From NCBI RefSeq assembly GCF_006345805.1, contig NC_043002.1:120342001-120406000 (forward strand): a DNA stretch of 64,000 nucleotides, in the 5' to 3' direction. The notes beneath the pieces were generated by a model, which was not told the DNA's origin, did no database searches, and saw only the letters and a list, made by a program, of their open reading frames with translations. The DNA is from Octopus sinensis (Eukaryota). A program made the position numbers and the translations under genes. This document shows, piece by piece, positions 9,368 to 58,799 of this stretch (its first letter is position 1; each line of letters starts with the position of its first letter).

Positions 9368-9553
9368 AGGCGCAGGAGTGGTTGTGTGGTAAGTAGCTTG
9401 CTAACCAACCACATGGTTCCGGGTTCAGTCCCACTGCGTGGCATCTTAGGCGAGTGTCTTCTGGTATAGCCCCGGGCCGACCAATGCCTTGTGAGTGGAT
9501 TTTGTAGACGGAAACTCAAAGGAGCCTGTCGTATACATGTATATATGTATATA

Positions 9554-9591
<38 letters not shown>

Positions 9592-9800
9592 TGTGCCTGT
9601 GTTTGTCCCCCTAGCATCGCTTGACAACCGATGCTGATGTGTTTACGTCCCCGTCACCTAGCGGTTCGGCAAAAGAGACCGATAGAATAAGTACTGGGCT
9701 TACAAAGAATAAGTCCCGGGGTCGATTTGCTCGACTAAAGGCGGTGCTCCAGCATAGCCGCAGTCAAATGACTGAAACAAGTAAAAGAGTGAAAGAGAGT
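9368..9800 (+). mobile_element. SINE family A (tRNA-derived head, CORE-like box, internal microsatellite)
   Basis: Head AGGCGCAGGAGTGG..GGTTCAGTCCC with Pol III A/B-box-like motifs; CCTT(A/G)GGC(A/G)AGTGTCTTC resembles the CORE box; (TA/TG)n insert; GTAAAAGA tail repeats; nine copies in the window. Confidence 0.9.
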
Positions 9801-10424: not shown

Positions 10425-10709
10425 AACTGACAACAGGAAGCGTATACCTAAACCATTGAACAGGGAAATATTCAAGAAGACTCATTTAAATTAGCTCTGT
10501 TTTTCTGCTAATTAATGAGCATTTCTCCGCTTCGTGCAAATATTACAAGATCTCCATAAAACCTTTTTTGATGCCAGTTATGATTGCATAGGGATCAAAG
10601 GATTAAACATATTTAAACATAAACGCAACAAACATCCCTAACTGACTTTAATTTAGTAGATATAGCTAGGGGTCAATTCAATTGAAAATGCCTATAAATG
10701 GAAATGTTA

Positions 10710-11130
10710 CTCTCTTTACTCTTTTACTCCTTTACTCTTTTACTTGTTTCAGTCATTTGACTGCGGCCATGCTGGAGCACCACCTTTAGTCGAGCAAATC
10801 GACCCCAGGACTTATTCTTTTGTAAGCCCAGTACTTATTCTATCGGTCTCTTTTGCCGAACCGCTAAGTGATGGGGACGTAAACACACCAGCATCGGTTG
10901 TCAAGCGATGTTGGGGGGGGGGGACAAACACAGACACACAAACACACACACACTCATACATATATACGACAGGCTTCTTTCAGTTTCCGTCTACCAAATC
11001 CACTCACAAGGCATTGGTCGGCCCGGGGCTATAGCAGAAGACACTTGCCCAAGATGCCACGCAGTGGGACTGAACTCGGAACCTTGTGGTTGGTTAGCAA
11101 ACTACTTACCACACATCCACTCCTGCGCTT
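10710..11130 (-). mobile_element. SINE family A
   Basis: Full-length reverse copy of 9368-9800. Confidence 0.9.
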
Positions 11131-12539
11131 ATTATGTTATATAGTGTAGATGTAGAATAGGGAGACAGAAGTGTAAATAGTCTACCGGGTTGGCTGAAAA
11201 TACCTTGAGGCTAGATTTACATCAGTCATGCATTCCTTTATGTTCCGAATAAGTGTAAGAAAACGTTCCTTCCGAAATATATGACTAAAAGTTTTGAAAG
11301 ACGGATGAGAGAAAGAAATCAATCCCAGAGAGATGAACCCACAACCTACTCATTGGTGGATAATTAAGCAACAAAAGATCGGGCATATAAAATCAAGTTA
11401 AAATTAATCTAATTACATTCACTTTCACCATGAGATCGCGCAGAATTAATTTTTGCTCCTAGAATTTTATCTTCAAAGTCAATAATACATCACTGAAACA
11501 AAAAAAATGCTTTTTCTCCCGTGTGTTGCTGTTCCTTAACCGTCACTATTGTCGTATAAGTTAGCCAAAGCTACAGGTGAGATAATGTTACTGTTTAGTA
11601 TAAAGAAACGTTTTGTATAGCACCATATGTTAGTTTATGGAAAACTGAGAGTATTGGCAAAATACTTCGACTGAATAAATATAAAATACTTTACAACTTG
11701 TAATAAAAGAATCAATTGGCAATTTAATTTTGAAAACGCAATTTTAGCCTCACTTCAAAATTCAAAATTAGAGGATGCACTCGAGACAGTTTTATCTCCT
11801 TCTAAGAAGGAAAATTACTTGTTTCTAGTCTTCAGAAACTTTCATCAGAGAAAAATACCCGTTTTTATCCATGGAAAAATTTGTATCATATGACTATAAA
11901 CTGAAAACGTATTTAGTTAACCAATTATGTACTACAGAACGAGCTTCAGATAATTTGAAATATGCTGCAAGATATAAGATTTGTTTTAAAGTAAGCAAAG
12001 TGATTACACCATAAACATTTTATTTCAACATAGGCAAAGCATTTCCAGAGAGCTGGAACAAATACTGAAAGTTATTCTATCGACCGCTTTAACAACGTTA
12101 ATATCTACTGCTGAAGTGTATTAAGAATTTGCTAAATCAGTTTCATTTGTGCAATAGAACTTTTCTTAGCAACGATGACAATTAACTAATTAATGCCAAC
12201 CTTCCATGATCTTCTATCCATCTATAGTTAAGTAGCTTAAATTTATTTCTAGTTTGTATAATTTCGGACTCGCCAAAACTGGTCTGCTTATTTTGCATAA
12301 CAGTGCTAGAACATAATTAATTAATAGATAATAAATTCCTTGAATTGTTTCTACACAAACAAACACCTCACTGGCAGAAAACAACCGTACAAAGCTTTAT
12401 TTACAAAACCACTAAATTTAATGCTGATTTATCTTAATTTCTTTAAGAAAAAATGGAGCAAGAGACGGAATTGGCATGTGGGCGCAAGAAATTTAAAATT
12501 TCACCGCAATCCTGAATGTAAAGTGTGCTGCACCACTAC

Positions 12540-17969: not shown

Positions 17970-18445
17970 TATATGTATGCCGGGTCACTTCTGAGGCTCT
18001 CATAAGTGCTACTGGTAACAGAATCTAGTACAACCTGTTGCATGGTCGGGTTGTCGGCGACTAAACCGGCAACCCCACTAGGCTACCCTACTGAGGAAGC
18101 TGGCTAGAAACCCAACAGGTTTAAAAACAAGACCTGTTGAAGGGTCGGATGAACCTAGTGCAGGCTCAACGGATATCTAGCAATAGCACGGGCACGCAAA
18201 AATTCCGTGATGGTGTCCGGCGTGCTAGAAGACCCCTGGGAGTGAGGCATCCCTAAGCTTCTGTTGAAACATGTCTCGAGGAGAAGGTCACTCTGATATA
18301 AAACCAGATAGGCTGAGAATGGCATTGAACATTTCGGAGTCTTTGGCTTGTGCTAGATATCATGACGCTCTCACCTCCCTGAGCTTGGAACTAATATTGA
18401 CACCGGTGTGCCCACGATTGAGTCAGCTCGCCTTACTACTACTAC
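17970..18445 (+). mobile_element. Short structured non-coding retroelement (probably RTE-derived) with (ACT/AAT)n tail
   Basis: A GC-rich island after (TA)n with several hairpins, the motif GGAGAAGGTCACTCTGATATAAAACC resembling RTE 5' UTRs (from memory) and a trinucleotide tail. Confidence 0.5.
17995..18160 (+). ncRNA. Degenerate HDV-like ribozyme fold
   Basis: P2 CACTAGG(18076-82)/CCTAGTG(18154-60) is perfect; P3 CT(A)C/GAG around L3 CCTACT; GG at 18102-03 for P1.1; P4 CAACAGGT/ACCTGTTG is perfect; J4/2 ATGAA. P1 is only tentative. Confidence 0.55.
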
Positions 18446-18465
18446 TAATAATAATGATGACAATG

Positions 18466-19620
18466 CATCGGGTGAGAAAAATATTGGCTTCAAAGCTCAA
18501 TTTGAGAAACATAAGTTCGGCAATAAACTCGCGCATAGTCGCAGTTGTTCGGTATGGCTCTGGAATCCTGAAGTGAACGGGAGAGGAGCTAAACGAGATG
18601 GACAGGCAAAAAGCAAAATGATGCAAGGATCCCATCTCATGAAGAGAGCAATTGGAGGAAAGGGACTGATAAGTATGGAAGTCTCCATACCTATCGAACT
18701 TGAGAGCTTAATGCGATACCTATCCCGAAGTAAGGAAACCTTACTAGTGTCAGTTAAGAATGTGGGAGTATTGAGAGCAGAGAAAAAAGGGAAAACAAAG
18801 GAAGAAGTACAAAAAGGACATGAAGAAGCATTACGCAAGGGACTACATAATCAATTCCATGTAACCACAAAAGACGTTGCTAGAAAACATAGGTAGGATT
18901 GGCTGAAAAAAGATGCAGTGAATAAAAACTAAGAGCACTACACTGGCAGCGCAAGACCAAGCTTTGGCCATGAATTGGAGGATAAACCTTAGGAATGAGC
19001 AAGTGTCTCCGCTGTGCCGCATCTGTAATAGAGTGGGTGAAAACATTGTCCATATCACGAGAGAATACCCTAGACTTGCCCAAAACCATTACAAGTTGTG
19101 GCGAGACGATAAAGCAGCGAAAGTGCTACAATGGAAACTGCGAAAAATAGGGGCTAGAGAGAGAGGTAAGACATGGTATAAACACAAGCCGCAGAGAGTG
19201 GTGGGGTTGTAGACTTGCAAAATTTTCTGGGAATGCCCAACATAAACATATCAGGTACCAGAGCATAACATACCGGACCTAGTGGTGGTCGACATGATGC
19301 GCCCCATGTGCTATATAGTTGATGTAGCGTGCACCTTTGACTCACGAATGATAAATACAACCCTCTTAAGTAGGAAATAGCCTGACTATGGAAAGTGAAG
19401 GAAGTGAAGATAGTGATAACTTTTGTTCAGTCCTTGGGAGCGGTATCAGAAGGCATCAAGAGGAATATAAACGAAATCGGAATAGAGTACCCAGTGGAAC
19501 TGTTACAAAAGCTTTGCCTCTTTGGCACCGTCAGAGCAATCAGGAAAGTATTAGGTAGATGAAAACAAACCCGTTTAGTATGCAAAACTCCAGGAGTTCC
19601 AACAAAACCTTTGACGAAAG
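18466..19620 (+). mobile_element. R4/Dong-clade non-LTR retrotransposon, 5'-truncated and decayed
   Basis: RVRKILASKLN..AINSR..VRYG, GGKGLISME, GLHNQF, the zinc-knuckle relic SPLCRIC..ENIVHI, KWY-type HKPQRV, RLE PDLVVVD..DVA and the terminal LLQK..GTVRAIRKVL. (AAT)n follows. Confidence 0.85.
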
Positions 19621-20719: not shown

Positions 20720-21203
20720 TCTAACGGTTATATTGTGTAAGATTTGTGTACTGAGTTCACCAGCAGCTATTGATGACATGGTGTATTGAAATATTACAAT
20801 CATATAAAGAATGTGCTAAGCAAAAGGGTTTAAGCAATCTCAATTTCATGTGAAATAAACTGTTATTTTTTCTTTCTAATATAATCAAAGGATATTTTGT
20901 GACTGTCAGTAAAACATATTTAAAGTCTGTGGTTTCTTCCCCCTAAAACACTATTTCTGTGCAAGAAAGTTCCAAAGAAAATCTTAAACCACGAAAGCAA
21001 AACAGAAACCTAAACATGATTTGAGCTTTATTTATACTTTAAGCTGTGTTTGAGAGCTTTGTAACTAATTATAACGTTGATAAAGTGTATCTGGATCACT
21101 TCACGATGATGGATGGATTTTTATCTCAATGATTACTCCTGAGAGTATTAGAACTTAATAATTTGAACCATGGTTATATTCCGTTAGTTCTAAATGATAT
21201 GTG

Positions 21204-23784: not shown

Positions 23785-24135
23785 CTTTCTCCCCGCACCC
23801 TACTTTTCCAACACCACCATCCTCACAGGCACCCTTCATCGTCCCTAACATATCACCGACTCCTTTACCTGCACATCTAGCAGTGTCATTTACTGCATCT
23901 CCTGCTCATTCTGCTCTTCTCTCACCATCGGGCAAACGGGACGTCGCTTGGCTGACCGGTTCACGGAGCACCTCCGAGACATCAGACACGACAACGACTC
24001 CCCGGCCTCGCGCTATTTCCGCTCTACCGGTCATTCACTATAACACCTGTCTGCGTTCGGAATTTTGGGTTTTCTGTGCACAGGGGCCATCCGGGCTCTC
24101 GTCTTTGTCGTAGACAGGTTTTAATCTACTCTTCG
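23275..24135 (+). mobile_element. Penelope-like element fragment (RT C-terminal part + GIY-YIG endonuclease)
   Basis: FYQH..AMGTGTGPDYANPFVG..YSRHIDDC (PLE RT motifs) and FTCTSSSVIYCISCSFCSSLTIGQTGRRLADRFTEHLRDI (GIY-YIG). Frameshifted and preceded by (TG)n. Confidence 0.9.
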
Positions 24136-28431: not shown

Positions 28432-28822
28432 ATTTTCGGTGCCGTTTGTATGTTAAGAAGCTTACTTTTCAACCACATTGTTTCGGGTTTAGTTCCACTT
28501 TGTGACACCTTAGGCAGGTGACTTCTACTATAGCCTCAGGTCGACTAAAGACTTGTTAGTGGATTTGGTAGACGGAACGTGTGTGTGAGAAAGTGTGTGT
28601 ATGTCTTTGTTTCTGTGTTTGTCCCCCTCCCCATCACCGCTTGACAACCGGTGTTGGTCTGTTTTAGTCCCTGTAACTTAGCGATTTGGCCAAAGACATT
28701 GATAGAATAAGTAGTAGGCTTAAAAATTAAGTCCTTAGGTCGATTTGTTCCACTAAAATTAATCAAAGCAGTGCTCCAGCATGGCCGAAGTCGAATGACT
28801 GGAACAAATAAAAGAACAAAAG
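28432..28822 (+). mobile_element. SINE family A, diverged
   Basis: Same module order with many substitutions. Confidence 0.75.
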
Positions 28823-28981
28823 AATATTTATATGATTTTAAAGCAAGTATGAATTTAATTTCCCAAAGCTTATTTCGTTATGTCTATTTATGGATAGAAA
28901 GTTTCTAATATGCACATATAAAGCTGGTTTGGCGGGCAGGCTGAATATCATAAGGTATCTTTGACATTTGTAAACGATATA

Positions 28982-30980: not shown

Positions 30981-32762
30981 ATTGTTATCGGAAGAATGAA
31001 AGCTGTAACAGAAGTTATAGAACCTGACTTAATACTCTGGGAAATTTTGTTGTCTCTTTATTTACCGAGTTGAAATATCTCTAGCCTCAGATTTTCATTT
31101 CATCATTGTAGTGTCGACAAAGCGGTTGAAATTTGCCTAGTGGTTTCGGTTTTTCAACAGTCCGTTACCCGAAAGCATTTGAACAAGCATCAATTCAAGA
31201 AATCCCCATTCTTGCTGCAGATGTTTTTGTTGTTAATATCTTTAGGAACCATTACTTAAGAATTATATGAAATAGAGAATTGCTCATAATATTCAGATAT
31301 TATGTTTTAACATTTTTATTCGATAAATTTGGACTGTTTTCTAGAAAAGGAATATAAAAGAGTGCTTATAAAATAGCTTCATGACCTCAAAACATATTGC
31401 TTTTCAACATTTCGACTGACTTTCAAGAATTCTCTAACCTTGAACTAATGCTTTAATTTTCTCAAAAGATGGTTTCCGTTCTTGTGTAAAATCTAATACA
31501 TTTTAATAATACCGAGGATCTTATTTCCATGAAAATGTAAAACGATGAGTTAAAAATCAAGTCATGAGAGTACTTTATTTACTAGTGCCTTTAGTTGTTT
31601 TATTTTGTAAATCAAGGCATGAATATATAACATATATTTACAATAAAATATAAAAGAATAATTTCACATAAAACGTTATTTCACTCTATGCAATGTTTCT
31701 CGAAACATAACAATCGATAGACTTTCTGTGTGTTGCACAAATTAAAATGGACAGCATCTTACAAAGCAAAACTTAGTGCTATCTAAGTTTTTCGAAGCAT
31801 TCTTGTGTATATAGATTGTAGGCAGACGAATTAGATATATTGCTAAAGTGTACCAAGACGGTTCAATATCAATTTATCACAAAGTCTTGCTTTAAGCATG
31901 CAAGTTTACGCCATAACACTAATTTTGTTCGGAGATACGTAAAACATTCATCTGATGAGTAAGCGTAGACCAAACTTTTATTTTTAGTTTTGATAGTATT
32001 TTCAATATGGGTGCTCTGCTTATCAATAATTACTTATCAAAATGCATCGAAATAACAGGTTCACTGCCTTTAAATATATTTAACTTTTCTAATTGATAGT
32101 TCTGAATCGATAGATGCATCAGTTTAGGTTTGAAATATGCTCTTCACTCCCTCTATGAATGCTACATAAACAGTTCAATTTAAGTATAGGTTTTCTTTTG
32201 CCACAAATATATCTTATTGTGTGAGATATGTACTTGACACTTTCCAGATATAAAGGTTTTTTTCTCTCATGGTCAAGTTGAAATATGCTTCAGAAATCTA
32301 TATTTATGAAAGTCAGTAAACATTCTTACAGTTTCAACGTCATTCTGTCTGTAGACAAGACATTGACGGTCTTAATTTGTTACAATGTACGTCATAAAGT
32401 GACTCAAACATGACATTAGTATAACTTGAATAAACTAAGGGAGCTGTCAGTAAGTCCCATTTAAATATATTACTACTACTGCTGATACCCTTTTTTTCCT
32501 GGTTTTGCCCTGTATATATTGACGTAACCCTCAGAAGGTTGATTTTCTTTAATATTTATTTCCCAAACATTTTTATTTACATAAGGTTTAAGAAAAACAG
32601 ACTTTTAATAAAGAGTGTGGAAGTGTTTATGATACACAAATTATAATGATACTTGCTTATGCTATTTCAAATTTATACCACTGGCCACCAAGAGTTATTT
32701 CTCTTCATTCATGCTCATACGTGTGTGTGTTATATTATAGTATATCACATGATATTATATAT

Positions 32763-33130
32763 AGGTGCAGCGTGGTTGTGTGGCAAGAAGCTTGTTTCAC
32801 AACCACTTGGTTCCAGGTTCAGTCTCACTGCGTTGCACCTTGGTCTTGTGGCTTCCACTATAGCCTCGGGCCGATTAAAGCCTTGTGAATGGATTTGATA
32901 GACGGAAACTGAAAGAAGCCCACCGCATGTATATTTATGTGTGTGTGTGTTCCGCCCAGCACCACCACACATACATACATACTACCACTCCTCAACCAAT
33001 GTTGATGTGTTTAGGTCGCCGTGACTTAGCGGTTCAGCAAAAGAAGCCCTGGGGTCGATATGTTTGACTAAAATCGTTCAAGGCGGTGCTCCAGCATGGC
33101 TGTACTAAGTTGACTGAAACAAGTAAAAAA
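32763..33130 (+). mobile_element. SINE family A, diverged
   Basis: Head, CORE-like box and tail are recognisable. Confidence 0.85.
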
Positions 33131-34431: not shown

Positions 34432-34628
34432 TTTCTTCTATTTGTTTCAGTCATTTGACTGCGGCCATGCTGGAGCACCGCCTTTAGTCGAACAAATCGA
34501 CCCCAGGACTTATTTTTTGTAAGCCTAGTACTCAATCTATCGCTTACTTTTGTCGAACCGCTAAGTTAAGGTGACGTAAACACACCAACATCGGTTGTCA
34601 TGCGATGGTGGGGACAAACACAGACACA

Positions 34629-34671
<43 letters not shown>

Positions 34672-34856
34672 CACACACACACACCACACACACACACACA
34701 CACATATATATATGTTTCCGTCTACCAAATCCACTCTCAAGGCTTTGGGTGGGCCCGAGGCTATAGTAGAAGACACTTGCCCAAGGTTCCACGCAGTGGG
34801 ACTGAACTCGGAACCATGTGGTTGGTAAGCAAGCTACTTCCCACACAGCCACTCCT
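34432..34856 (-). mobile_element. SINE family A
   Basis: Reverse copy with a long internal (CA)n. Confidence 0.88.
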
Positions 34857-34994: not shown

Positions 34995-35378
34995 TCTTTT
35001 TACTTGCTCCAGTCATTAGACAACGGCTAATGTTTTAGTCGAACGAATCATCACCCACTACTCATATTTTTTCAAAGTCTCATGCTTATCCTATCGGTGT
35101 TTTTTGCCGAACCGTTAGGTTACAGAGACGCAAACACACTGGTACCAGCTGTCACGTAATTGTGGGGTACAAATACGGACACAAAAACACACACAAAAAC
35201 ATACAGAAATAGATGCATTCACACATATACATACACGGCGGACTGCTTTCACTTTCAATCTAACCAAATCCACTTACAAGGTATTTGTCGGTCCTAGGTT
35301 ATAGTAAAAGACAACTCGCCGCCTAAGGTGCCATGTGGTCGGGAAGCAAACCACTTACCACACAACCAAGCCCACACC
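34995..35378 (-). mobile_element. SINE family A, old diverged copy
   Basis: Degenerate match to the same modules. Confidence 0.65.
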
Positions 35379-39983: not shown

Positions 39984-40210
39984 ATCATCATCATTGTTCG
40001 ACCGTGGTCGAGACAATGGAATTTACCATGCTACGCCAGACTTCACGGTCCATCATGGCATTACGGAGGTCCTGTTACTGGATGCCTGTATCCCTGGAGA
40101 TTACATCAGAGTAGGAGAGTGTGCGCCCTCTGGTATTGCGAGTAGATGGCTTCCAGAGGAGAAGAGTAGAAATTACCTCTTTTTCAGCTCTACAACAATG
40201 TCCAGCTGCC

Positions 40211-40212
<2 letters not shown>
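39984..40212 (-). mobile_element. RTE/RTEX-type LINE 3' end with (TGA)n tail
   Basis: AGHCCRAEKEVISTLLLWKPSTRNTRGRTLSYSDVISRDTGIQ*QDLRNAMMDREVWRSMV, followed by short TGA repeats. Confidence 0.7.
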
Positions 40213-41071
<859 letters not shown>

Positions 41072-41089
41072 TTAATAATAATAATAATA

Positions 41090-41166
<77 letters not shown>

Positions 41167-41821
41167 TTGCTTGTCAGTTGTTTGACCTTAATCAGTTGAG
41201 CATGTCCCTCAGTGGCTGACGATATGTGCATCTCTGATCATGAGCAGAAGTAGTGGGGGAGCATCAATGCCCTGATGCAGTACCAAGCAGCGACTCTCAT
41301 GGCTTCTGATCTTAACTGATTGCAAGTGTTATCATGTACATTGTTTTGTCTTGGTATAAAAGATGGGCTACAGCAAATATTCTGCTCAATACCACAGATT
41401 TGCTTGTCAGTTGTTTGACCTTAATCAGTAGAGCATGTTCCTCAGTGGCTGACGATATGTGCATCTCTGATCATGAGCAGAAGTAGTGGGGAGCATCATA
41501 GCCTTGTGTTGAGAGGGATTCTTTGGGGTTTGAATAATTCACCTCTGGAAACATGGGTATTTCATTGAACATCCTTAGACAACCCTTAATCAGGGACCTT
41601 TTGAGTGGGATGGGTTACCCGACCAGAAGAAAATTCTAACTGGGCCCCAACCGCAAGGTCATGCGCTATTTATCTTGTTATGAGATCACCATGTTGCGCA
41701 CATATGGTTGTGATGCATGTGCCTAGTGTACCCTTATCAGACGGGTAGTCATGATGGGTATACTGGGCTTCGCATATTTTACCCCAGTGTCACTTTGATG
41801 ACATGCACTGCTCTCTCACTC
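41167..41821. mobile_element. Same (AAT)n-embedded element, copy 2, preceded by a ~100 bp internal duplication
   Basis: 41266-41821 matches 20108-20664; 41167-41265 repeats 41399-41498. Confidence 0.8.
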
Positions 41822-41831
41822 AATAATAATG

Positions 41832-41887
<56 letters not shown>

Positions 41888-41889
41888 CA

Positions 41890-42099
41890 TTTCTACTATG
41901 GGCACAATGCTTGAAATTTGGGAGAAGGGGACGAGTCGTTTATATTGACCCCAGTGCTTCACTGTTACTTGATTTATCGATCCCGAAAGAATGAAAGATA
42001 AAGTCGACCTCAGCAGAATTTAAACTCAGAACGTGGCGACGGACGAAATACCGCCAAGCATTTCGCCCGGCATGCTAACGTCTCTGCTAGCTCACCGCC

Positions 42100-42100
<1 letters not shown>
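41890..42100 (-). mobile_element. SINE family B between (AAT)n arrays
   Basis: Reverse-strand core and head. Confidence 0.82.
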
Positions 42101-42101
<1 letters not shown>

Positions 42102-42169
<68 letters not shown>

Positions 42170-42192
42170 TAATAATAATAATAATAGAGAGT

Positions 42193-42244
<52 letters not shown>

Positions 42245-42321: not shown

Positions 42322-43698
42322 CTAAGAGACTGAGATCAAATTATGGAGCATGACCACTACTTTCCAATAATAAACCTGGAATGTATGTATGTTGAACCTG
42401 AATGCGTAAAAATACTGACATTTCTGATGACAGGTGCCTCATTTCTAGTCTTTACTTGATTCATGAATGCAGCTCTTTCTAAGCAACCTATGGCGTGAAC
42501 TTATGCCTGACAAATGAACTACATTTCCACCATCTTGGAATCCTTCTAGACTCAAAGGACTGTTAGAGACGATTTACACAGAGTCATTCAGGCTCTGTTG
42601 TTATCTGATTCGTAGACATTACAAACTTGTCAGATGAAAAATCTGTTAAGGCACAAAAATGGATATATTCAATATATTATATGATTTATTGGTGGAACTG
42701 GAGGTTGCCGTGGATAGATCTTTCAATAATGGCACATTTACTCGCTTTTAAGTACACATTCAACGATAAGGCATAAACTGCGGTCAAAGCCTTCACTATT
42801 CTTATAGTATCGGCAACTGAGGAAAATTTTTGCTGAAGTAAAGTTTGCCCGGAATCGGTCAGATAAAGGACAAGCCAAATACTGGGTTGATATAATTGAC
42901 TAACTCATTCCCCCTAACGTTGCTGGGCTTGTGCTAAAATTTTCAACCATAATTATTATTTACTTTCTTGTAAAAAAGATCCGTGCAATATTTAGGTCAG
43001 AAGATATTACAAATAAGGAAGAAATTCAGAGACAGTTCGAGTTTTTGTCCATCAAACAGTTTTTGAAAGAGGCCAATCACTTTATCAACTAGAAAAACGT
43101 AATGTCGAAATTCGATAGATCTATAAATATATCAATTATATCAGGTTTAAATAAAATTCAAAACAAAACCTTGTAACCTTTTATAAAATGCAGCTTTTAT
43201 ACTGTTTGATGTATGGGCAATTTTTTGAAAAATAATATAATTACAGAAGTTATGAATATTAAAAGTAATTTATAAAAACTATCGCATATTAATTAAAATC
43301 ATTTACAGTAGTTTAAAATGTTATTTGCGATGTTCAAAGAAGGCGTTGCTCTATAATAGCGCGGAGATAATTTGTTTTATATTGAAATACGTTTGAAGTA
43401 GCATAGATTAGAATAATTACTTGGTGTTTTGGTATAAACATTACAGCATGATGGTTGGATAAATTGTACAGGGAGCGGAAAAATAACCTCGCAGAATCGT
43501 TCTCGATAAAACTAATTTACTCCCCCAGGTTGTTTGTAGCTTTTTCTACTTCGAGTTCGACGGTTAAAAACAATTTATTTTGTGAAGTTTCCCAAATTTT
43601 ATGGCGTAAGCAATATACCACACACGCACACACACACACACATACATATATACATACATACAACATTCACACACACTCACACACACAAACACACACAA

Positions 43699-43729
<31 letters not shown>

Positions 43730-43730
43730 C

Positions 43731-43798
<68 letters not shown>

Positions 43799-44954
43799 AA
43801 CATAGTAAAATAAACAAAACGAGTATTGTGAACTTGGTATGGGTAGTGGAAAATTCAACGTCTCGAACCGAGTCCTTCTTCAGGGAATTGTTAACAGAAA
43901 AGAAAGTAAAAGATTAAATGTTTGAGTTGGCGTATTTCGCTGACTTGAATAAGAATTCTAATTTTCGCAAGGATGAGTATGTAAAATCGCCACGAGATGA
44001 CCTCTGTGATGGTGAAGCCTATCATTTATAATCCTAATTTTAAGGGGGGATACGATATTTTTCCTAATGCGTGTAACGATTTAGTCACAGGAAACAAGAT
44101 TAGCAGAATCTTATTGAAAAATACTTTCGATGTCAGTTCATGAGGTCTAACTTTTACATACTCTGGATTCTTAGTTGAAGACTTAGCTATCGACCATGAA
44201 AGGAATCGATTTTGTAAGATTTTAAAATTTAAAATTTAGGAAATATCGTATTAAAGATTTTTTCTCACCCAAAAAAAAAAATCAAAAGATAATTTTGTGT
44301 GATATGTGTCAGATAGTTCTGTGCCGTGTTTGTTTCTATCCTTAATTAATATGTGCGTAATTTACTTTTTTACCAATCTCAGTCACTTTAATATCGGAAT
44401 AAAATAATGTTCTGATTAATGTCCAGTTTTATTTAATGTAACTATAGTACTGTTTCCATAATCTAACGTGATTTCATGTATTCCATAATATAAATATATG
44501 TCGTAAAGTAACGGCGGTCATTTGAGATGATTACTTTTACAAGATATACGATAATAAACAGTAAAGAAGCTGAGAAACATAGATACTAAGTTAGCTACTA
44601 ATTAGTGTAATTTTGGTAGTAATGACTTATGTCCCTCTTAGTGTGAGGCATTTATGTGTAATAATACCCTCTATACAATATAAATATAATTAATATGTTT
44701 AAAAGGAAAAAAATTATTTTCGAATTCTTTTCTCTTATGAGGTTTTTCACGCTAACTACCTGATGATTTCTTGTTAAGATTCCTTATTAAGAAGTTATCC
44801 TTAATTGTTAAATTTAGCTACTAATTAGATATACAACTTTGTGACAAATAGAAATACATAATTACATATAACGATTGACTAATATTTGATTTATTAGTGA
44901 AATTACGGTAAGAGATAAGAGAATAACTACAAAAAGCTCAGTTGTACTTTGAAT

Positions 44955-45000
44955 CTTTCTATTCGCTTATCTTATGTTTTCTTGTTCTTTTTCTTTTTAG
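44955..45000 (+). promoter_or_regulatory. 3' splice site (polypyrimidine tract + TAG acceptor)
   Basis: CTTATGTTTTCTTGTTCTTTTTCTTTTTAG lies immediately before the GC-richer open frame. Confidence 0.8.
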
Positions 45001-45494
45001 GTGTATGCCTTACGATGTTCCTGGTTATCAGTACAGCCACTGTGTGGATATCAGCTATCCAGCTGCGCATCATGCATTCGAAATCATCATTTCCAAGTAG
45101 CTTCAGTAAGTCTGGTCTGAGTACAAGCAGTTTCAACGACGAAACCAGTCTAACAGTGCCATTAGACGCAACACTTAGTACTGGAGCCAGTTGCTCAGGG
45201 ACCGCAGGCACCAGTGCAGACAAGCTCGAGAGCTATGTCATGGTAGACTACCTTCGGCACCAACAAAGTAGTTCGGGTGAAGAAGGGTGTGCCGGTGGAA
45301 TTCCCCCTGCTGGTATGGAGAACTTCATTAATGCCATTGTGTCGCAACGTGAACAGAGGAAATTCCAGCATCGAAGATTAGAAGGGAAGCGTCGTAAATT
45401 TTTCCTATCCAAAAATCTCGGATGTTGGTTTTCCCTCATTGCTACTCTACTGACTATACTGACGGCACTTGCACCACTTTTTGTCATCACCTAA
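45001..45494 (+). CDS. Terminal coding exon of a probable Cys-loop ligand-gated ion channel subunit (nAChR-like; M3, intracellular loop, M4)
   Basis: A long polypyrimidine tract ends TTTTTAG at 45000, giving a phase-1 entry (G|GT). The frame is open for 164 aa to TAA at 45492-45494 and is GC-richer than the flanks. GVCLTMFLVISTATVWISAIQLRIMH matches the register of nAChR M3 (GxYLTxxMxxSxxSVxxTVxVLxLHH). It is followed by a Ser/Gly-rich loop, a basic stretch KRRK and a C-terminal hydrophobic helix LGCWFSLIATLLTILTALAPLFVIT. That this is an exon is more certain than the family call. Confidence 0.62.
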
Positions 45495-45564: not shown

Positions 45565-46462
45565 CCCATAAACATAAGAGACAATATTGAATACAAAATA
45601 CTTAACAACAATTCATACAATAAGATAAATTCCATGATTTACTTTATAAAACAAAATGATAATATAACAGTTCTGAAGAGAATAAAAACACGATAAACAA
45701 TGTGGTGAAATATCAAACTGCCTAAACACACAAAGGGAAAAACTATAATCTGAGAAAGAGACCAAGTTTAAGAATGCCTTCATTGAAATAAACTACTGCT
45801 TTTGAAACAATATTCCCTTTGTATGATAAAAACAACAAAGAGAAAAGATGAGAACAATAGAAATGGAAAAGGGAAATTGATAGAAGGGTTTAGTGTCATA
45901 ATGTTATACATAGTTTGTCAGAATCGGACTCATACCAATTAATGGAACGCTTTACAAGTTGTAAATGTAAAAATTATTTTCTCTTGTTTAATTCCATAAT
46001 TTCTCAGATTCAAAAATATGATATTCTTCTATGTCTGGTGTAAAATATAATAGAGGTAATTTCGTTTTTGATTTCTATTTACATCTCTCAAATATATTTC
46101 CAAACAAAACGTGAAGAATAATTGACAAATTGATTTTATAAAACAATAGGCATTTATTTTCACCTTGGAAACGGGATGAGTTTAAAGTGAATTAAAGCAG
46201 GAACAAAAATACACAAATTGAAACCGCGCATACATATACTGATGAATATTTATATGTACACAGGAACCTGTGCACATAAATACGTATTTATACATAAAGC
46301 AAGCAACCTAAGTAGAGCACATAGGGTTTGAGTAATTCAATAAGTTTATTTATGCATGTATGTGTATACATTATATACAGATATAATCATAATTACAACT
46401 GCATATATATATATATATATAATATATATATATAAACAAATATATGTGTGTATATGTGTGTT

Positions 46463-46556
<94 letters not shown>

Positions 46557-46622
46557 AGCAAATATATGTGTGTTTGTATGTACACTTGTATATATATGTA
46601 TATATATATGTATATATATATA

Positions 46623-46671
<49 letters not shown>

Positions 46672-47861
46672 CCTACCATAATCAAGAAACTAGTTTTTCA
46701 GAGTTTCATACCTTGATTAAATTCCCGATAATCAGCATCATGAAGGAATTACGGTTATAGGGCTCAAGAGAGATTACTATATATAAGCAGATTTGTTTAT
46801 AGAGTAGTTAGATGGGTGGTTACCACTCTGGGCGTAGGGTCGCTCTCATGAATAGAGTGTTACTACGGTATTTTCGAGAACACATCTCTAGAACAGAACG
46901 TAAAAGTCATAACTAATGTAGATGAATGAAGGCTATTACTGGCCTGCAGAGTTGATGCCATAACGGGAATGAGTAATAGCAATGGAGAGAAAAATTGGAA
47001 CAGAGCAAGACTATATCATGTATATAAAGCATGGAAGATATGAATATGACAAACGAAACTTCGAATTTAATATGTTGTATTGTCAATAATATGCCAATTG
47101 CTGCAGCGAGTCTTAAATTACAGGAAAATAAAGATGATATGATAAAACGCTGGCCGAGAATAGTCAAGAGAGATTCTTGAGTCGACACAAAAAGAAAGTT
47201 CGGGGCGGTAGTTCAACAATATAATGTCAAATGACAAGTAGAAGAAATTCAAAGTGAGTCAGGTCAAAACGCGTGTGTTTCTGATAAGTGAATGAGTTGG
47301 TGGTGTGAGGGATACCATGTGAAGAGCAATGATTCAAGCTTTAGGAAATTAATACAAAACATCGATATTACGTTGTTTTAAGCTCTACATGTACTTTGAC
47401 AAAGGAGTAATACTTTGTTTTCACCATGCCTGAATAGCAATATATCGTGGAAGTTTCGTTATTGGAATCTGTCTTTTACATTTACCATGCATTTGTTTAC
47501 GCACTAGCAATTGGTTAAATCTGGTAGAAATAACAATAATTTCGTATATTATCGATTCTGTATTGCATTAAAAGTAAAAAGGAATTGTAGCTTACTGCAT
47601 GAGTTTTAGAACTTTATTTCCAATGAGCCTGTCATTTCGAAAATCATCAATCTACATAAATTATTCACAAAATATCAGTTAGTAGTTTGACTGGCACGAA
47701 ATATAATCATGTATCAAGCTCAGTTTTATTATGGTCTAAATTGGATCAGCATTTTGTCCCTAAATTTCAAGATTATCTACATGAGTGTTGCGTACGCCAT
47801 TTTATTGCAAATTCTTTTACACAAACGCACACACACAGATATATATACAAATACACACGCA

Positions 47862-47938
<77 letters not shown>

Positions 47939-48039
47939 ATACATATATACTTAAAAGAAAACGCAAGCATATCTACAGGCATGTCACACATTGTTTTCAT
48001 TTATCATGTTTTCTTTTAGATAAATTTTGCGTACATCCA

Positions 48040-48068
48040 TACATCCATACATCCATATATGTATATAT

Positions 48069-48104
<36 letters not shown>

Positions 48105-48364
48105 CTTGCCTCGCACTACATGATACAAGGGTATTTCAAAGGTTTAGACATGTGCCCAATCATATAGAAATATCTTGTAATCTAATATATACATTGCGTT
48201 TGTATTGTATTGAATTTGTTTGTTGACTCCAATCTATTGTTCTATTAAAACTACGAACAAATTTCACGCGCAAATCACACATACACACACACACAAGCAT
48301 GCACAGACACACACACATAAACATGTAACGTGTATAATAATGTAAGCATGTATATTAATATATG

Positions 48365-48409
<45 letters not shown>

Positions 48410-48507
48410 ATATATATATGTATGTATATATATATATGTATATATATATATACATATGTGTGTGTATATATATATATGTATATATATATATGTATATATA
48501 TATATAC

Positions 48508-48571
<64 letters not shown>

Positions 48572-48607
48572 TATATATATGCAGAGACGTGCACACACAG
48601 AGACATG

Positions 48608-48665
<58 letters not shown>
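48040..48665. repeat. Large compound (TA)n/(CA)n/(TG)n region
   Basis: Read directly; similar blocks at 46400-46670, 50773-51600, 55141-55500, 56214-56520 and 61770-62476. Confidence 0.95.
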
Positions 48666-48668
<3 letters not shown>

Positions 48669-49140
48669 CTAGAAGATAACATTTTGTTTGAAGCTCATCG
48701 CTTTAACTTTTGTTGTTATAGCTGTGAATAATTTCGTTAGATTTTATAAGCCTGTTTTTTTTTTTTAATCGCTTTTTGTAAATTATGTTTATGTTCATAA
48801 GAACACAGGAACATTTTCTCAGCCGCATACAAGTAAAATGTGAGTATGTATGTGTGTAAGTTCTATTTACGCTTTTTCGTATTTCATAATAAGCCGAGAA
48901 TAAAACATTAATGACTTCGGCCTGATTACTTTCCTGGCCGAATCTTTACCATTCACCCATTAAATTTCCACTCAATCTTCAGAAACTGAAATATGTAACT
49001 GAGTACATTAAACTCCACTGAGTGAAACCATTTGTATTTCTAACAATACAGGTCAGCTGTAGATGACGATATTTCCATATTGCAGCATCTTTCATACTCT
49101 TGCCTATTAAGTGTTGGAATATACTTTTCTTCATCACGTT

Positions 49141-49556
49141 ATTCTTTTACTCTTTACTCTTTTACTTGTTTCAGTCATTTGACTGTGACCATGCTGGAGC
49201 ACCGCCTTTAGTCGAGCAAATCGACCCCGGGACTTATTCTTTGTAAGCCCAGTACTTTTTCTATCGGTCTCTTTTGCCGAACCGCTAAGTGACGGGGACG
49301 TAAACACACCAGCATCGGTTGTCAAGCAATGCTAGGGGGACAAACACCGACACACAAACACATATACACACACATATATATATACATATATACGACAGGC
49401 TTCTTTCAGTTTCCGTCTACCAAATCCACTCACAAGGCTTTGGTCGGCCCGGGGCTATAGCAGAAGACACTTGCCCAAGATGCCACGCAGTGGGACTGAA
49501 CCCGGAACCATGTGGTTGGTTAGCAAGCTACTTACCACACAGCCACTCCTGCGCCT
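49141..49556 (-). mobile_element. SINE family A
   Basis: Full-length reverse copy with little divergence. Confidence 0.9.
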
Positions 49557-50767
49557 ATTGTTTATATAATTTCTTTATAACGATGGATAATGGATTTACT
49601 TAGGATTATATACGAAGATTATGAATATTCTACTGGACTCTTAAGTTAAACAAAGCAAGGTTTTCTTATCGGTACTCAGCCTTGGAATGAATATTCTCTT
49701 AGAAGTATTTTAACAGTCTTCAAACACAATTGATTTTACGTAGAATGGCTAAATAAAGATTTATAAGAATTAAAAACTTAGGGAGATCCCTAGCGATTGC
49801 TCTCTGTTACATAATGCAATAAAAATGCCATGATCGATATAATAGCAATGATATCTCCAAACAGTCGAAGAGATTTCGTGACTTTCAGAGTGAAACAATG
49901 CAAAGTTTTAAAATGTTCCCAAATTATATTTAATACAACTACTTTATCGGTTATTACAACATTACGTTGTGTCATACCTGCTTCCCAAGATGATTCGTGT
50001 TATTAAAAGCTGTTCACCTAAGGAAGTGTTACGGTGCTTTTACAATCTATTTTATATGGAACATACGTATATATAAACTAAAATATTTTACGCAGAGAAA
50101 CAATGATTGAATAGTATTCACGAAATTTCATTAGCAAATAGTTAATATAAGAGATTATTACCACGTCTCAATCATTGTGCTAATTTATATAGTGCATTTA
50201 AATATAATTTCATGGTGATTAATATTATGCTATGGAATCAATAGAAAATATATTATTTCGTATATATGGTAAAGAAATTAAATAATTCTTTTTCCCTTAT
50301 TTGGGAAGCTCTATAATTGGTATTTCTGACGAGAGTAATAACATAATTATGAACAAATTGTCGATAACGGTCTTTAGTTATTGAGCATCGATCCATGGAA
50401 AGTGAAATGCAATTTTATGTTTAATTCGATGTTTTATAGTAAAATTGCATATTCGGTTATTCCACAAAATTTTGGGGAAGATGATAAAATGTACCAATTA
50501 TTTATACAGGTATCTGTCAAAATACATTTGAAATTGTACTGATATCATGAAAGTTATTTTGTACAACAGATGGTGCATAGAATATCTCAAATTTACACCT
50601 CAGTCTACTGCATATTTTATGGAATATAACCTTCTTTGTATATTCACGTATGAAAAATACGTTACAGCGCATAATATTTACTGTTATATAATAAGTATTG
50701 TTAGCACCAAAGCATTTATACGGATTCATATAGATATATACGCACATATCTAAAGAAACAATGAAAG

Positions 50768-52458: not shown

Positions 52459-52936
52459 AGGCACAGGAGTGGGTGTGTAGTTTAGTAGCTTGCTTACCAA
52501 CCACATGGTTCCGGGTTCATTTTCACTGCATGGCACCTTGGGCAAGTATCTTCTACTATAGCTCTGGGCCAACCAAAGCCTTGTGAGTGGATTTGGTAGA
52601 CGGAAACTGAAAGAGACCCGTCGTATATATATTTATATATATATATATTATATATATGTGTGTGTGTGTGGTGTGTTGTGTGTGTGTGTGGTGTGTGTGT
52701 GTGTGGTGTGTGTGTTGTGTGATGTGCGTGCGTGTTGCGTGCGCGTGTGGTGTGTTGCTGCGGAGGTCGGTATTGTTCCCCCAACATCGTTTGACAACCG
52801 ATGCTGCTGCGTTTACGTCCCCGTAACTTAGCGGTTCGGCAAAAGTAACCGATAGAATAAGTCCTGGGGTCGATTTGCACGACTAAAGACAGTGCCCTAA
52901 CATGACTCCAGTCAAATGACTGGAATAAGTAAAAGA
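52459..52936 (+). mobile_element. SINE family A
   Basis: Full-length, with an expanded compound internal microsatellite. Confidence 0.88.
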
Positions 52937-58348: not shown

Positions 58349-58370
58349 TAATATATATATATATATATAT

Positions 58371-58551
58371 AGGCGCAGGAGTGGCTGTGTGTTAAGTAGC
58401 TTGCTAACCAACCAAATGGTTCCGGGTTCAGTCACACTGCGTGGCATCTTGGGCAAGTGTCTTCTGCTATAGCCTCGGGCCGACCAAAGCCTTGTGAGTG
58501 GATTTGGTAGACGGAAACTGAAAGAAGCCCGTCGTATATATGTATGTATAT

Positions 58552-58590
<39 letters not shown>

Positions 58591-58782
58591 TTGTCCCTCT
58601 AGCATTGCTTGACAACCGATGCTGGTGTGTTTACCTCCCCGTCACTTAGCGGTTCGGCAAAAGAACCGATAGAATAAGTACTGAGCTTACAAATAATAAG
58701 TCCCGGGGTCGATTTGGTCGACTAAAGGCGGTGCTCCAGCATGGCCGCAGTCAAATGACTGAAACAAGTAAAAGAGCAAAAG
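58371..58782 (+). mobile_element. SINE family A inserted in (TA)n
   Basis: Full-length, with (TA)n on both sides. Confidence 0.9.
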
Positions 58783-58799
58783 ATATATATATATTATAA

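What the first reader, a model, noticed from the sequence alone, without database searches (positions are those of the whole stretch)
45001..45494. Orphan terminal exon of a divergent, intron-containing Cys-loop receptor-like gene
Seen: a strong acceptor, phase-1 entry, and a 164-aa frame with two hydrophobic helices, the second ending at the stop. Knowledge: alpha7-type nAChR genes have a phase-1 intron just before M3, and their last exon carries M3-loop-M4; cephalopods have expanded atypical nAChR-like genes. As I recall, chemotactile receptor coding regions are intronless, so this would be a different, spliced lineage. Unusual features are a Gln and Trp late in M3, a Ser-rich loop with DYLR, a basic KRRK before M4, and no extracellular C-tail. 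The family call is inferred from helix register only.
Basis: partly seen in the sequence, partly recalled or inferred. Interest (0 to 1): 0.7.

Follow-up and report, generated by a model that had tools for sequence, protein, structure and literature searches.

The report
Last exon of octopus nicotinic-receptor gene
This stretch is the real, conserved last coding exon of an octopus nicotinic-acetylcholine-receptor-family subunit gene that public annotation already contains; it looks orphaned only because the intron in front of it is about 65 kb long, so the finding is correct but ordinary.

Summary
Window 45001-45494 (+) follows a polypyrimidine tract and an AG. It enters in phase 1, reads 163 codons and ends at TAA, with hydrophobic helices at both ends.

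It is a genuine coding exon. It is the only part of a 12.5-kb contig from a distant cephalopod that aligns to the window. The differences fall 17/13/101 by codon position (pN 0.09, pS 0.85). It is 494/494 identical to Octopus vulgaris, while the surrounding intron is about 97.5% identical.

The peptide alone matches nothing in Pfam or the PDB. An exhaustive search found a 468-aa transcript-derived protein carrying it as its C-terminus. That protein has Neur_chan_LBD (1.5e-55) and Neur_chan_memb.

The peptide is 100% identical to the C-terminus of RefSeq XP_036360202.1, "neuronal acetylcholine receptor subunit beta-3 isoform X2" of Octopus sinensis. The O. bimaculoides model has the same C-terminus, and Argonauta hians has a 96% identical ortholog.

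No upstream exon lies in the window. The gene spans 357 kb in O. sinensis, and the last intron is about 65 kb in O. vulgaris.

The exon is already annotated, so interest is low.

The parts
44960..45000 (+). 3' splice site: polypyrimidine tract ending in AG (44999-45000)
   Evidence: Read directly. AG and pyrimidine tract are conserved in the distant cephalopod contig L001. Transcript contig L002 stops matching genomic DNA at this point.
45001..45494 (+). Last coding exon (phase-1 entry, 163 codons plus split Gly, TAA stop) of the nAChR-family subunit gene annotated as 'neuronal acetylcholine receptor subunit beta-3' in Octopus
   Evidence: 100% identity to XP_036360202.1 residues 317-481. Purifying selection. 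494/494 identical to O. vulgaris.
45003..45074 (+). M3 transmembrane helix (VCLTMFLVISTATVWISAIQLRIM)
   Evidence: Hydropathy. The Pfam Neur_chan_memb match on the full protein extends to residue 345, which is peptide residue 28. HMMER alignments to nAChR alpha1 and alpha6 M3. Aligned with M3 of a sea-cucumber nAChR.
45075..45317 (+). Intracellular M3-M4 loop: a Ser/Thr-rich variable part, then a conserved block DKLESYVMVDYLRHQQSS (45219-45272)
   Evidence: Translation. The variable part has pN 0.17 and the later part pN 0.07. A low-confidence AlphaFold helix covers P0004 residues 390-407.
45318..45416 (+). Putative MA (membrane-associated) amphipathic helix, rich in Arg/Lys (QREQRKFQHRRLEGKRRK), leading into M4
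   Evidence: AlphaFold predicts one continuous helix over P0004 residues 423-480, at low pLDDT. The position matches the pre-M4 segment of other nAChRs in alignment A2. The MA assignment is inferred.
45417..45491 (+). M4 transmembrane helix (LGCWFSLIATLLTILTALAPLFVIT), ending at the C-terminus
   Evidence: Hydropathy. Aligned with M4 of other nAChR-like proteins. It is the fourth and last hydrophobic segment of a protein with M1-M3 matched by Pfam. Pfam and PDB alignments do not reach it, so the assignment rests on topology.
45492..45494 (+). TAA stop codon
   Evidence: The distant ortholog stops one codon later (VITY-TGA).

Best explanation
Window 45001-45494 is the constitutive last coding exon of a multi-exon, very long nicotinic-acetylcholine-receptor-family (Cys-loop, pentameric ligand-gated channel) subunit gene of an Octopus species. 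The species is most likely O. sinensis. The gene is annotated in RefSeq as 'neuronal acetylcholine receptor subunit beta-3'.

The exon is spliced in phase 1 onto an upstream exon or an optional 24-nt microexon, completing a Gly codon. It encodes M3, the intracellular M3-M4 domain (a variable Ser-rich linker, a conserved helix, a basic MA-like helix) and M4, with no extracellular tail.

The complete subunit has a canonical Cys-loop. Its M2 has Glu at -1' and Leu at 9'. It has no vicinal cysteines in loop C, so it is a non-alpha subunit. It most likely co-assembles with alpha-type subunits into a cation-selective heteropentamer (inferred). In such a channel M3 and M4 form the outer, lipid-facing ring, and the basic MA helix lines the cytoplasmic exits of the pore (inferred).

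Shown here: exon boundaries, coding constraint, identity with the annotated protein, and family membership of that protein. Inferred: assembly partners, ligand, and the roles of the loop.
For: - Identity to the annotated protein: P0004 (XP_036360202.1, O. sinensis) residues 317-481 match window 44997-45491 at 100%.
- Domains: Neur_chan_LBD 2e-55 and Neur_chan_memb 4.3e-9, 37.4 bits against a cutoff of 28.1. The second match reaches into the exon. The relative P0002 gives the same domains.
- Best solved relatives are nAChR alpha1 (2.5e-49), alpha6, alpha7 and beta subunits, with alignment through M3 to RIMH.
- Cys-loop C170...C184, the GEK motif and the M2 leucines are invariant in alignment A2.
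- Splice use: similarity of transcript contig L002 (continuous CDS 918-2324) to the window and to L001 genomic DNA begins exactly at the Gly-303 codon.
- Selection: pN 0.092, pS 0.85, differences 17/13/101 by codon position. The conservation island is limited to the exon. Zero differences in 494 nt against O. vulgaris, where flanks are about 97.5% identical.
- Gene size: 356,897 bp in O. sinensis and 144,484 bp in Argonauta. The last intron is 64,903 nt in O. vulgaris, and the window is collinear with L003 from 20810 onward.
- Non-alpha status: in the HMMER alignment to human alpha1, Tyr190 aligns with Ile, Cys192-Cys193 with Lys-Gly, and the loop A Tyr93 with Asp (Gly in Octopus). The loop B Trp is kept.
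Against: - The exon peptide on its own matches no Pfam family and no PDB chain at E<=10.
- The M4 and MA assignments rest on position, hydropathy and a low-confidence model (mean pLDDT 50.4).
- No RNA-seq reads from the window's own species were examined. Splice use is shown in a relative and implied by the RefSeq models.
- Several canonical acetylcholine-contact residues are missing, so the ligand and even cholinergic function are unproven.
- RefSeq names for isoforms of this one gene disagree (beta-3, alpha-5, alpha-6, eat-2). The 'beta-3' label is a best-hit name, not established orthology.
Confidence: 0.95

Rival explanations
1. It belongs to the cephalopod chemotactile receptor (CR) family, the sucker chemosensors that diverged from nAChRs, rather than being a conventional nAChR subunit.
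For: The full protein lacks several acetylcholine-contact residues. The loop A Tyr is Asp or Gly, loop C Tyr190 and the Cys pair are absent, and the loop D Trp is Tyr. CRs are also described as lacking such residues. Outside cephalopods, the best hit returned by the word-index search was only 30% identical, among the 8000 candidates it scored.
Against: CRs are reported to be intronless (PMC11526382). This gene spans 144-357 kb and has a last intron of about 65 kb. It has orthologs with 80-83% identity to the decapod-like transcript protein P0002. That is the opposite of the diversifying selection reported at binding-pocket sites of octopus CRs. The 60 best PDB matches are all nAChR or 5-HT3A chains, and no chemotactile receptor is among them. 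No formal phylogeny with CR sequences was made.
Confidence: 0.03
2. It is a decaying exon relic (pseudogene fragment) left behind after gene rearrangement, not part of a working gene.
For: No other exon of the gene lies in the 64-kb window. O. vulgaris annotation has it as a 'hypothetical predicted protein, partial' made of only the last two coding pieces.
Against: There is strong purifying selection across deep cephalopod divergence. Acceptor and stop are intact and conserved. Full-length transcript-derived proteins in two relatives contain the exon. RefSeq models in O. sinensis and O. bimaculoides join it to the LBD exons. Its absence of company in the window is explained by a 65-kb intron.
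Confidence: 0.01
3. It is a terminal exon of some other two-helix membrane protein family, and the resemblance to M3-loop-M4 is coincidental.
For: The peptide alone gives no Pfam or PDB hit.
Against: The only protein cluster in 1.84 billion representatives that matches it is a Cys-loop receptor. It is 100% identical to the C-terminus of an annotated nAChR-family protein.
Confidence: 0.01

Closest known systems
RefSeq gene model 'neuronal acetylcholine receptor subunit beta-3' of Octopus sinensis (XP_036360202.1 isoform X2, XP_029637862.2 isoform X1), with the O. bimaculoides (XP_052824798-800) and Argonauta hians orthologs
   Same: The window peptide is identical over all 163 codons plus the split Gly. 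The O. bimaculoides model has the same C-terminus, and Argonauta is 96% identical. It is the same gene.
   Different: Nothing at protein level. The window is about 97.5% identical in DNA to the O. vulgaris locus, so it comes from a sister genome, most likely O. sinensis itself. O. vulgaris annotates only the last two coding pieces, as a partial hypothetical protein (CAI9723745.1). The 2015-era O. bimaculoides models (XP_014770912.1, A0A0L8HPK5) lack this exon.
Vertebrate non-alpha or accessory nAChR subunits (beta3/alpha5 type) and nAChR subunits in general (Pfam PF02931 + PF02932)
   Same: Same domain architecture, a 13-residue-spaced Cys-loop, and an M2 of the same length with -1' Glu, 9' Leu and 23' Pro. 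M3, a variable loop and M4 sit at the C-terminus. There are no vicinal cysteines in loop C, as in beta subunits.
   Different: Only about 30% identity to non-cephalopod nAChRs. The loop A Tyr is lost, the loop D Trp is Tyr, and 20' is Arg. M4 ends the protein with no extracellular tail. The 'beta-3' name is a best-hit label and orthology is not shown.
Cephalopod chemotactile receptors (CRT1, CRB1 and relatives)
   Same: They are nAChR-derived cephalopod pentameric channel subunits with altered acetylcholine-binding residues.
   Different: CRs are reported as intronless (PMC11526382), with binding-pocket sites under strong diversifying selection. This gene is intron-rich, 357 kb long, and highly conserved from octopods to decapod-like relatives. 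No CR chain is among its 60 best PDB matches.
Human alpha7 nAChR (CHRNA7)
   Same: Among the best solved relatives (E about 3e-43). From my recalled sequence, it also has a Gln late in M3, so that feature is not unusual.
   Different: It is an alpha subunit with a Cys pair and a full aromatic box. Its sequence does not detect the exon by tblastn.

Membership tests
Cys-loop / pentameric ligand-gated ion channel, nAChR family | N-terminal neurotransmitter-gated channel ligand-binding domain (Pfam PF02931) in the protein that carries this exon | tested here: met
   P0004: 2e-55, 188 bits, residues 46-253. P0002: 1.5e-55. This domain lies outside the window.
Cys-loop / pentameric ligand-gated ion channel, nAChR family | Signature disulphide loop, Cys-x13-Cys with FPFD | tested here: met
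   CRLNITSFPFDRQTC in P0004. C170 and C184 are invariant in A2. It lies outside the window.
Cys-loop / pentameric ligand-gated ion channel, nAChR family | Transmembrane region M1-M3 matching Pfam PF02932, with M3 encoded by this exon | tested here: met
   37.4 bits against a cutoff of 28.1, residues 261-345 of P0004. Residues 318-345 are the first 28 residues of the exon. HMMER alignments to alpha1 and alpha6 M3. The exon alone is below detection.
Cys-loop / pentameric ligand-gated ion channel, nAChR family | Fourth transmembrane helix M4 after a variable intracellular loop | tested here: inconclusive
   A hydrophobic 25-residue C-terminal segment aligns with M4 of three other nAChR-like proteins in A2. 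AlphaFold gives a helix over 423-480 but at mean pLDDT 50. No profile or PDB alignment reaches it.
Cys-loop / pentameric ligand-gated ion channel, nAChR family | Forms a ligand-gated cation channel | not testable with these tools
   Only sequence hints: M2 with -1' Glu and 9' Leu.
nAChR alpha subunits | Vicinal cysteines in loop C (Cys192-Cys193 of alpha1) | tested here: not met
   They align with Lys-Gly in P0002. There is no CC in the corresponding region of P0004. The subunit is non-alpha.
Cephalopod chemotactile receptors | Intronless coding region (retrogene-like) | tested here: not met
   Phase-1 intron in front of this exon. No upstream exon in the 45 kb of window before it. Last intron 64,903 nt in O. 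vulgaris. Gene span 357 kb. The CR property is taken from PMC11526382.
Cephalopod chemotactile receptors | Placement inside the CR clade in a phylogeny; expression in sucker sensory epithelium | not tested
None is among the 60 best PDB matches. No expression data were available.
   The phase and position in this gene are established. The alpha7 intron map was not retrieved (one search failed on term length and was not repeated).

The most novel reading that the evidence does not exclude
The gene carrying this exon could be a cephalopod-wide, slowly evolving non-alpha subunit whose acetylcholine-contact residues have degenerated. It might then represent an intron-bearing lineage close to the parent of the intronless chemotactile receptors, or a subunit of a non-cholinergic receptor. 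An alternatively spliced 8-residue insert (DWSFWTSQ) in the M2-M3 gating linker might tune it. Nothing here excludes this. Nothing specifically supports it beyond the altered binding-site residues and the lack of close non-cephalopod relatives in the searches made.
Probability: 0.07. Interest if true: 0.4.

Novelty: already known. Interest (0 to 1): 0.08.

Why it matters
It matters little beyond annotation quality. The exon is already part of RefSeq models in O. sinensis and O. bimaculoides.

Three points are useful:
- A terminal M3-loop-M4 exon of a Cys-loop receptor cannot be recognised by Pfam or PDB searches when taken alone. It needs its full-length context.
- Cephalopod nAChR genes can have introns of about 65 kb and spans of 357 kb. 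Windows of 64 kb, and some annotations, show them as orphan pieces. Examples are the O. vulgaris 'hypothetical protein, partial' and the truncated 2015 O. bimaculoides models.
- The gene is a conserved, intron-rich contrast to the intronless chemotactile receptors.

Tried and rejected
- Pfam and PDB phmmer on the 163-aa peptide gave no hits at E<=10.
- The word-index protein search with the peptide returned only a metagenome-called protein, P0001. For a while this suggested an unannotated exon. The exhaustive HMMER search and a search with the full-length relative showed that the RefSeq proteins had simply been missed.
- GC-content peaks as an exon finder were useless. Interspersed repeats give the same GC content.
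- Searches for upstream exons in the window all came back negative or at chance level. These were tblastn with P0002 to P0005 at word size 2, 7-mers of P0004 residues 1-316 with one mismatch allowed, and exact-string searches in the six-frame translation for the microexon peptide and the alternative tails.
- The AlphaFold model of P0004 from a 7-sequence alignment had mean pLDDT 50.4. It was used only for secondary structure, and no fold search was run on it.
- The AATAAA scan for a poly(A) signal is uninformative in this AT-rich DNA: 159 found against 142 expected.
- A literature search on alpha7 exon structure failed on a term-length rule and was not repeated.

Full report
**Observation.**
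Window 44960-45000 is a pyrimidine-rich tract ending in AG (44999-45000). From 45001 an open frame runs to TAA at 45492-45494. Bases 45001-45002 (GT) complete a split codon. From 45003 there are 163 codons: VCLTMFLVISTATVWISAIQLRIMHSK ... KRRKFFLSKNLGCWFSLIATLLTILTALAPLFVIT.

Hydropathy windows above 1.4 occur only at residues 1-24 and 135-163, and the second block ends at the stop. The enclosing stop-free run is 191 codons. That is longer than the maximum of each of 100 Markov simulations of the window (mean 131, largest 185). The window itself is AT-rich (about 34% GC) eukaryotic DNA, full of microsatellites and interspersed repeats.

**Is it a real exon?**
The first protein search found one relative, P0001, called on a 17-kb contig of an ENA 'metagenome' assembly. 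In 12.5 kb of that contig (L001), the only non-repeat similarity to the window is L001 1888-2395 = window 44989-45493. That runs from just before the acceptor to the stop, at 73% nucleotide identity.

The alignment shows a conserved CAG/TAG acceptor. The stop is displaced by one codon (VIT-TAA against VITY-TGA). The longer tail of P0001 arises because its gene caller read TGA as Trp.

Differences fall 17/13/101 on codon positions 1/2/3. pN is 0.092 and pS is 0.85, which is saturated. M3 differs at one residue in 27.

Against O. vulgaris the exon is 494/494 identical, while the surrounding intron is about 97.5% identical. This is a coding exon under strong purifying selection.

**What is it?**
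The peptice alone matches no Pfam family and no PDB chain at E<=10.

An exhaustive HMMER search of 1.84 billion cluster representatives found exactly one hit. P0002 is a 468-aa protein from a 2.5-kb Logan contig, and its residues 304-467 are this peptide at 85% identity. P0002 has Neur_chan_LBD (1.5e-55) and Neur_chan_memb (2.9e-7, M1-M3). Its best solved relatives are nAChR alpha1 (2.5e-49), alpha6, alpha7 and beta chains, followed by 5-HT3A. The alignments run through M3 to RIMH.

Searching with P0002 returned P0004, which is XP_036360202.1, 'neuronal acetylcholine receptor subunit beta-3 isoform X2 [Octopus sinensis]'. It also returned an Argonauta hians ortholog. P0004 residues 317-481 equal window 44997-45491 at 100%.

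On P0004, the Neur_chan_memb match (37.4 bits, cutoff 28.1) covers residues 261-345. It therefore extends 28 residues into this exon, which fixes the first helix as M3. The last helix aligns with M4 of other nAChR-like proteins. It is part of one long predicted helix over residues 423-480, in a low-confidence AlphaFold model with mean pLDDT 50.4.

**Splicing.**
Residue 317 of P0004 (303 of P0002) is Gly.

A transcript contig from a relative (L002, run SRR8281678) has a continuous CDS at 918-2324. It matches both the window and L001 genomic DNA only from the first base of that Gly codon onward. Upstream, the transcript encodes PGNSATTSVL, while the genomes have the pyrimidine tract. The acceptor is therefore used in a relative, and the RefSeq models use it in Octopus.

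**Why it looks orphaned.**
No other piece of P0002 to P0005 is found anywhere in the window on either strand. The alternative pieces seen in other isoforms are absent too.

The gene spans 356,897 bp in O. sinensis and 144,484 bp in Argonauta. In O. vulgaris (L003, OX597819.1) a 24-nt microexon (cag|ATTGGTCTTTCTGGACATCACAAG|gtaggt, encoding DWSFWTSQ) lies 64,903 nt upstream of the terminal exon. The window is collinear with L003 from position 20810, so the microexon lies about 19.8 kb before the window start.

The window is about 97.5% identical to O. vulgaris DNA and 100% identical to the O. sinensis protein. It most likely comes from O. sinensis.

**Annotation status.**
The 90% cluster of P0004 contains O. 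sinensis isoforms X1-X5 and O. bimaculoides isoforms X1-X3. It also contains O. vulgaris CAI9723745.1, a 'hypothetical predicted protein, partial' of 172 aa made of the microexon plus this exon only. Older O. bimaculoides models that lack this exon are in the cluster as well.

The names given to isoforms of this one gene vary (beta-3, alpha-5, alpha-6, eat-2). The 'beta-3' label is therefore a best-hit name. The exon itself is already known.

**How it probably works.**
The complete subunit has these features:
- A canonical Cys-loop (CRLNITSFPFDRQTC).
- An M2 of standard length with Glu at -1', Leu at 9' and Pro at 23'.
- No vicinal cysteines in loop C, so it is a non-alpha subunit.
- Loop A Tyr replaced by Gly (Asp in the decapod-like relatives), and loop C Tyr190 replaced by Ile in P0002.
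- Loop B Trp kept, and loop D Trp replaced by Tyr.

By established knowledge of nAChRs, such a subunit would sit in a heteropentamer with alpha-type partners in a cation channel. The exon would contribute the outer lipid-facing helices M3 and M4, and the intracellular domain between them. In other family members, that domain's basic MA helix lines the cytoplasmic portals and binds trafficking and clustering partners. These functional statements are inferences.

**Relation to chemotactile receptors.**
A review states that CRs are intronless and derive from nAChRs (PMC11526382). Intronless nAChR-like genes in molluscs are described as retroposed copies of intron-rich ones (PMC6896357).

This gene is intron-rich and huge, and it is conserved at 80-83% identity between octopods and the decapod-like transcripts. 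No phylogeny with CR sequences was made. None appears among the 60 best PDB matches.

**Verdict.**
The exon is an already annotated part of a known kind of gene. It is 'orphan' only because of a 65-kb intron. Interest is low.

Noticed in passing
L003 1001-1024 (O. vulgaris OX597819.1); about 19.8 kb upstream of window position 1: A 24-nt, phase 1-1 alternative microexon encoding DWSFWTSQ is inserted in the M2-M3 linker just before M3 in RefSeq isoform X1. It is absent from isoform X2 and from the two decapod-like transcripts. Isoform X5 ends after it with a short alternative tail and would lack M3 and M4.
   Followed up: partly
window 9370-9797(-), 10661-11150(+), 28447-28826(-), 32752-33128(-), 34434-34856(+), 35034-35313(+), 49139-49568(+), 52461-52936(-), 58356-58783(-): At least nine copies (69-91% identical) of an interspersed repeat of about 430 bp, SINE-like with an internal (CA)n tract. 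It accounts for many of the GC-richer patches and for recurring pseudo-ORFs such as ...QIHSQGFGRPGAIAEDTCPRCHAVGLNPEP....
   Followed up: partly
window 18366-19209 (+), 23849-24040 (+), 40402-40850 (+): Long stop-free stretches that look like decayed retrotransposon ORFs. Only 18922-19209 gave a weak, sub-threshold Pfam hit (zf-RVT, E 0.0059, 17.7 bits against a cutoff of 27.5). The others gave nothing.
   Followed up: partly
window 40075-40500, 40979-41231, 41717-42203, 43455-43917, 46346-46681, 47687-48731: Dense microsatellites (AAT/ATT-type runs, (CA)n, (TA)n-like) create many long spurious ORFs on both strands close to the exon.
   Followed up: no
L001 (ENA ERZ21867824, ctg55245l) 1899-2399: Cephalopod nuclear DNA sits in an assembly filed as a metagenome. 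Its called protein P0001 starts at an internal Met and reads two TGA codons as Trp, giving a false 27-residue tail. The true ortholog ends VITY-TGA.
   Followed up: yes
protein cluster of P0004 (not in the window): Isoforms of this one gene carry four different RefSeq names (beta-3, alpha-5, alpha-6, eat-2). O. vulgaris annotates only the last two coding pieces, as a partial hypothetical protein. The 2015 O. bimaculoides models stop at, or read through, the donor before this exon.
   Followed up: yes
The word-index protein search with the exact exon peptide did not return the RefSeq proteins that contain it at 100% identity. Only the exhaustive search led to them. A negative from the word-index tool should not be read as 'unannotated'.
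   Followed up: yes
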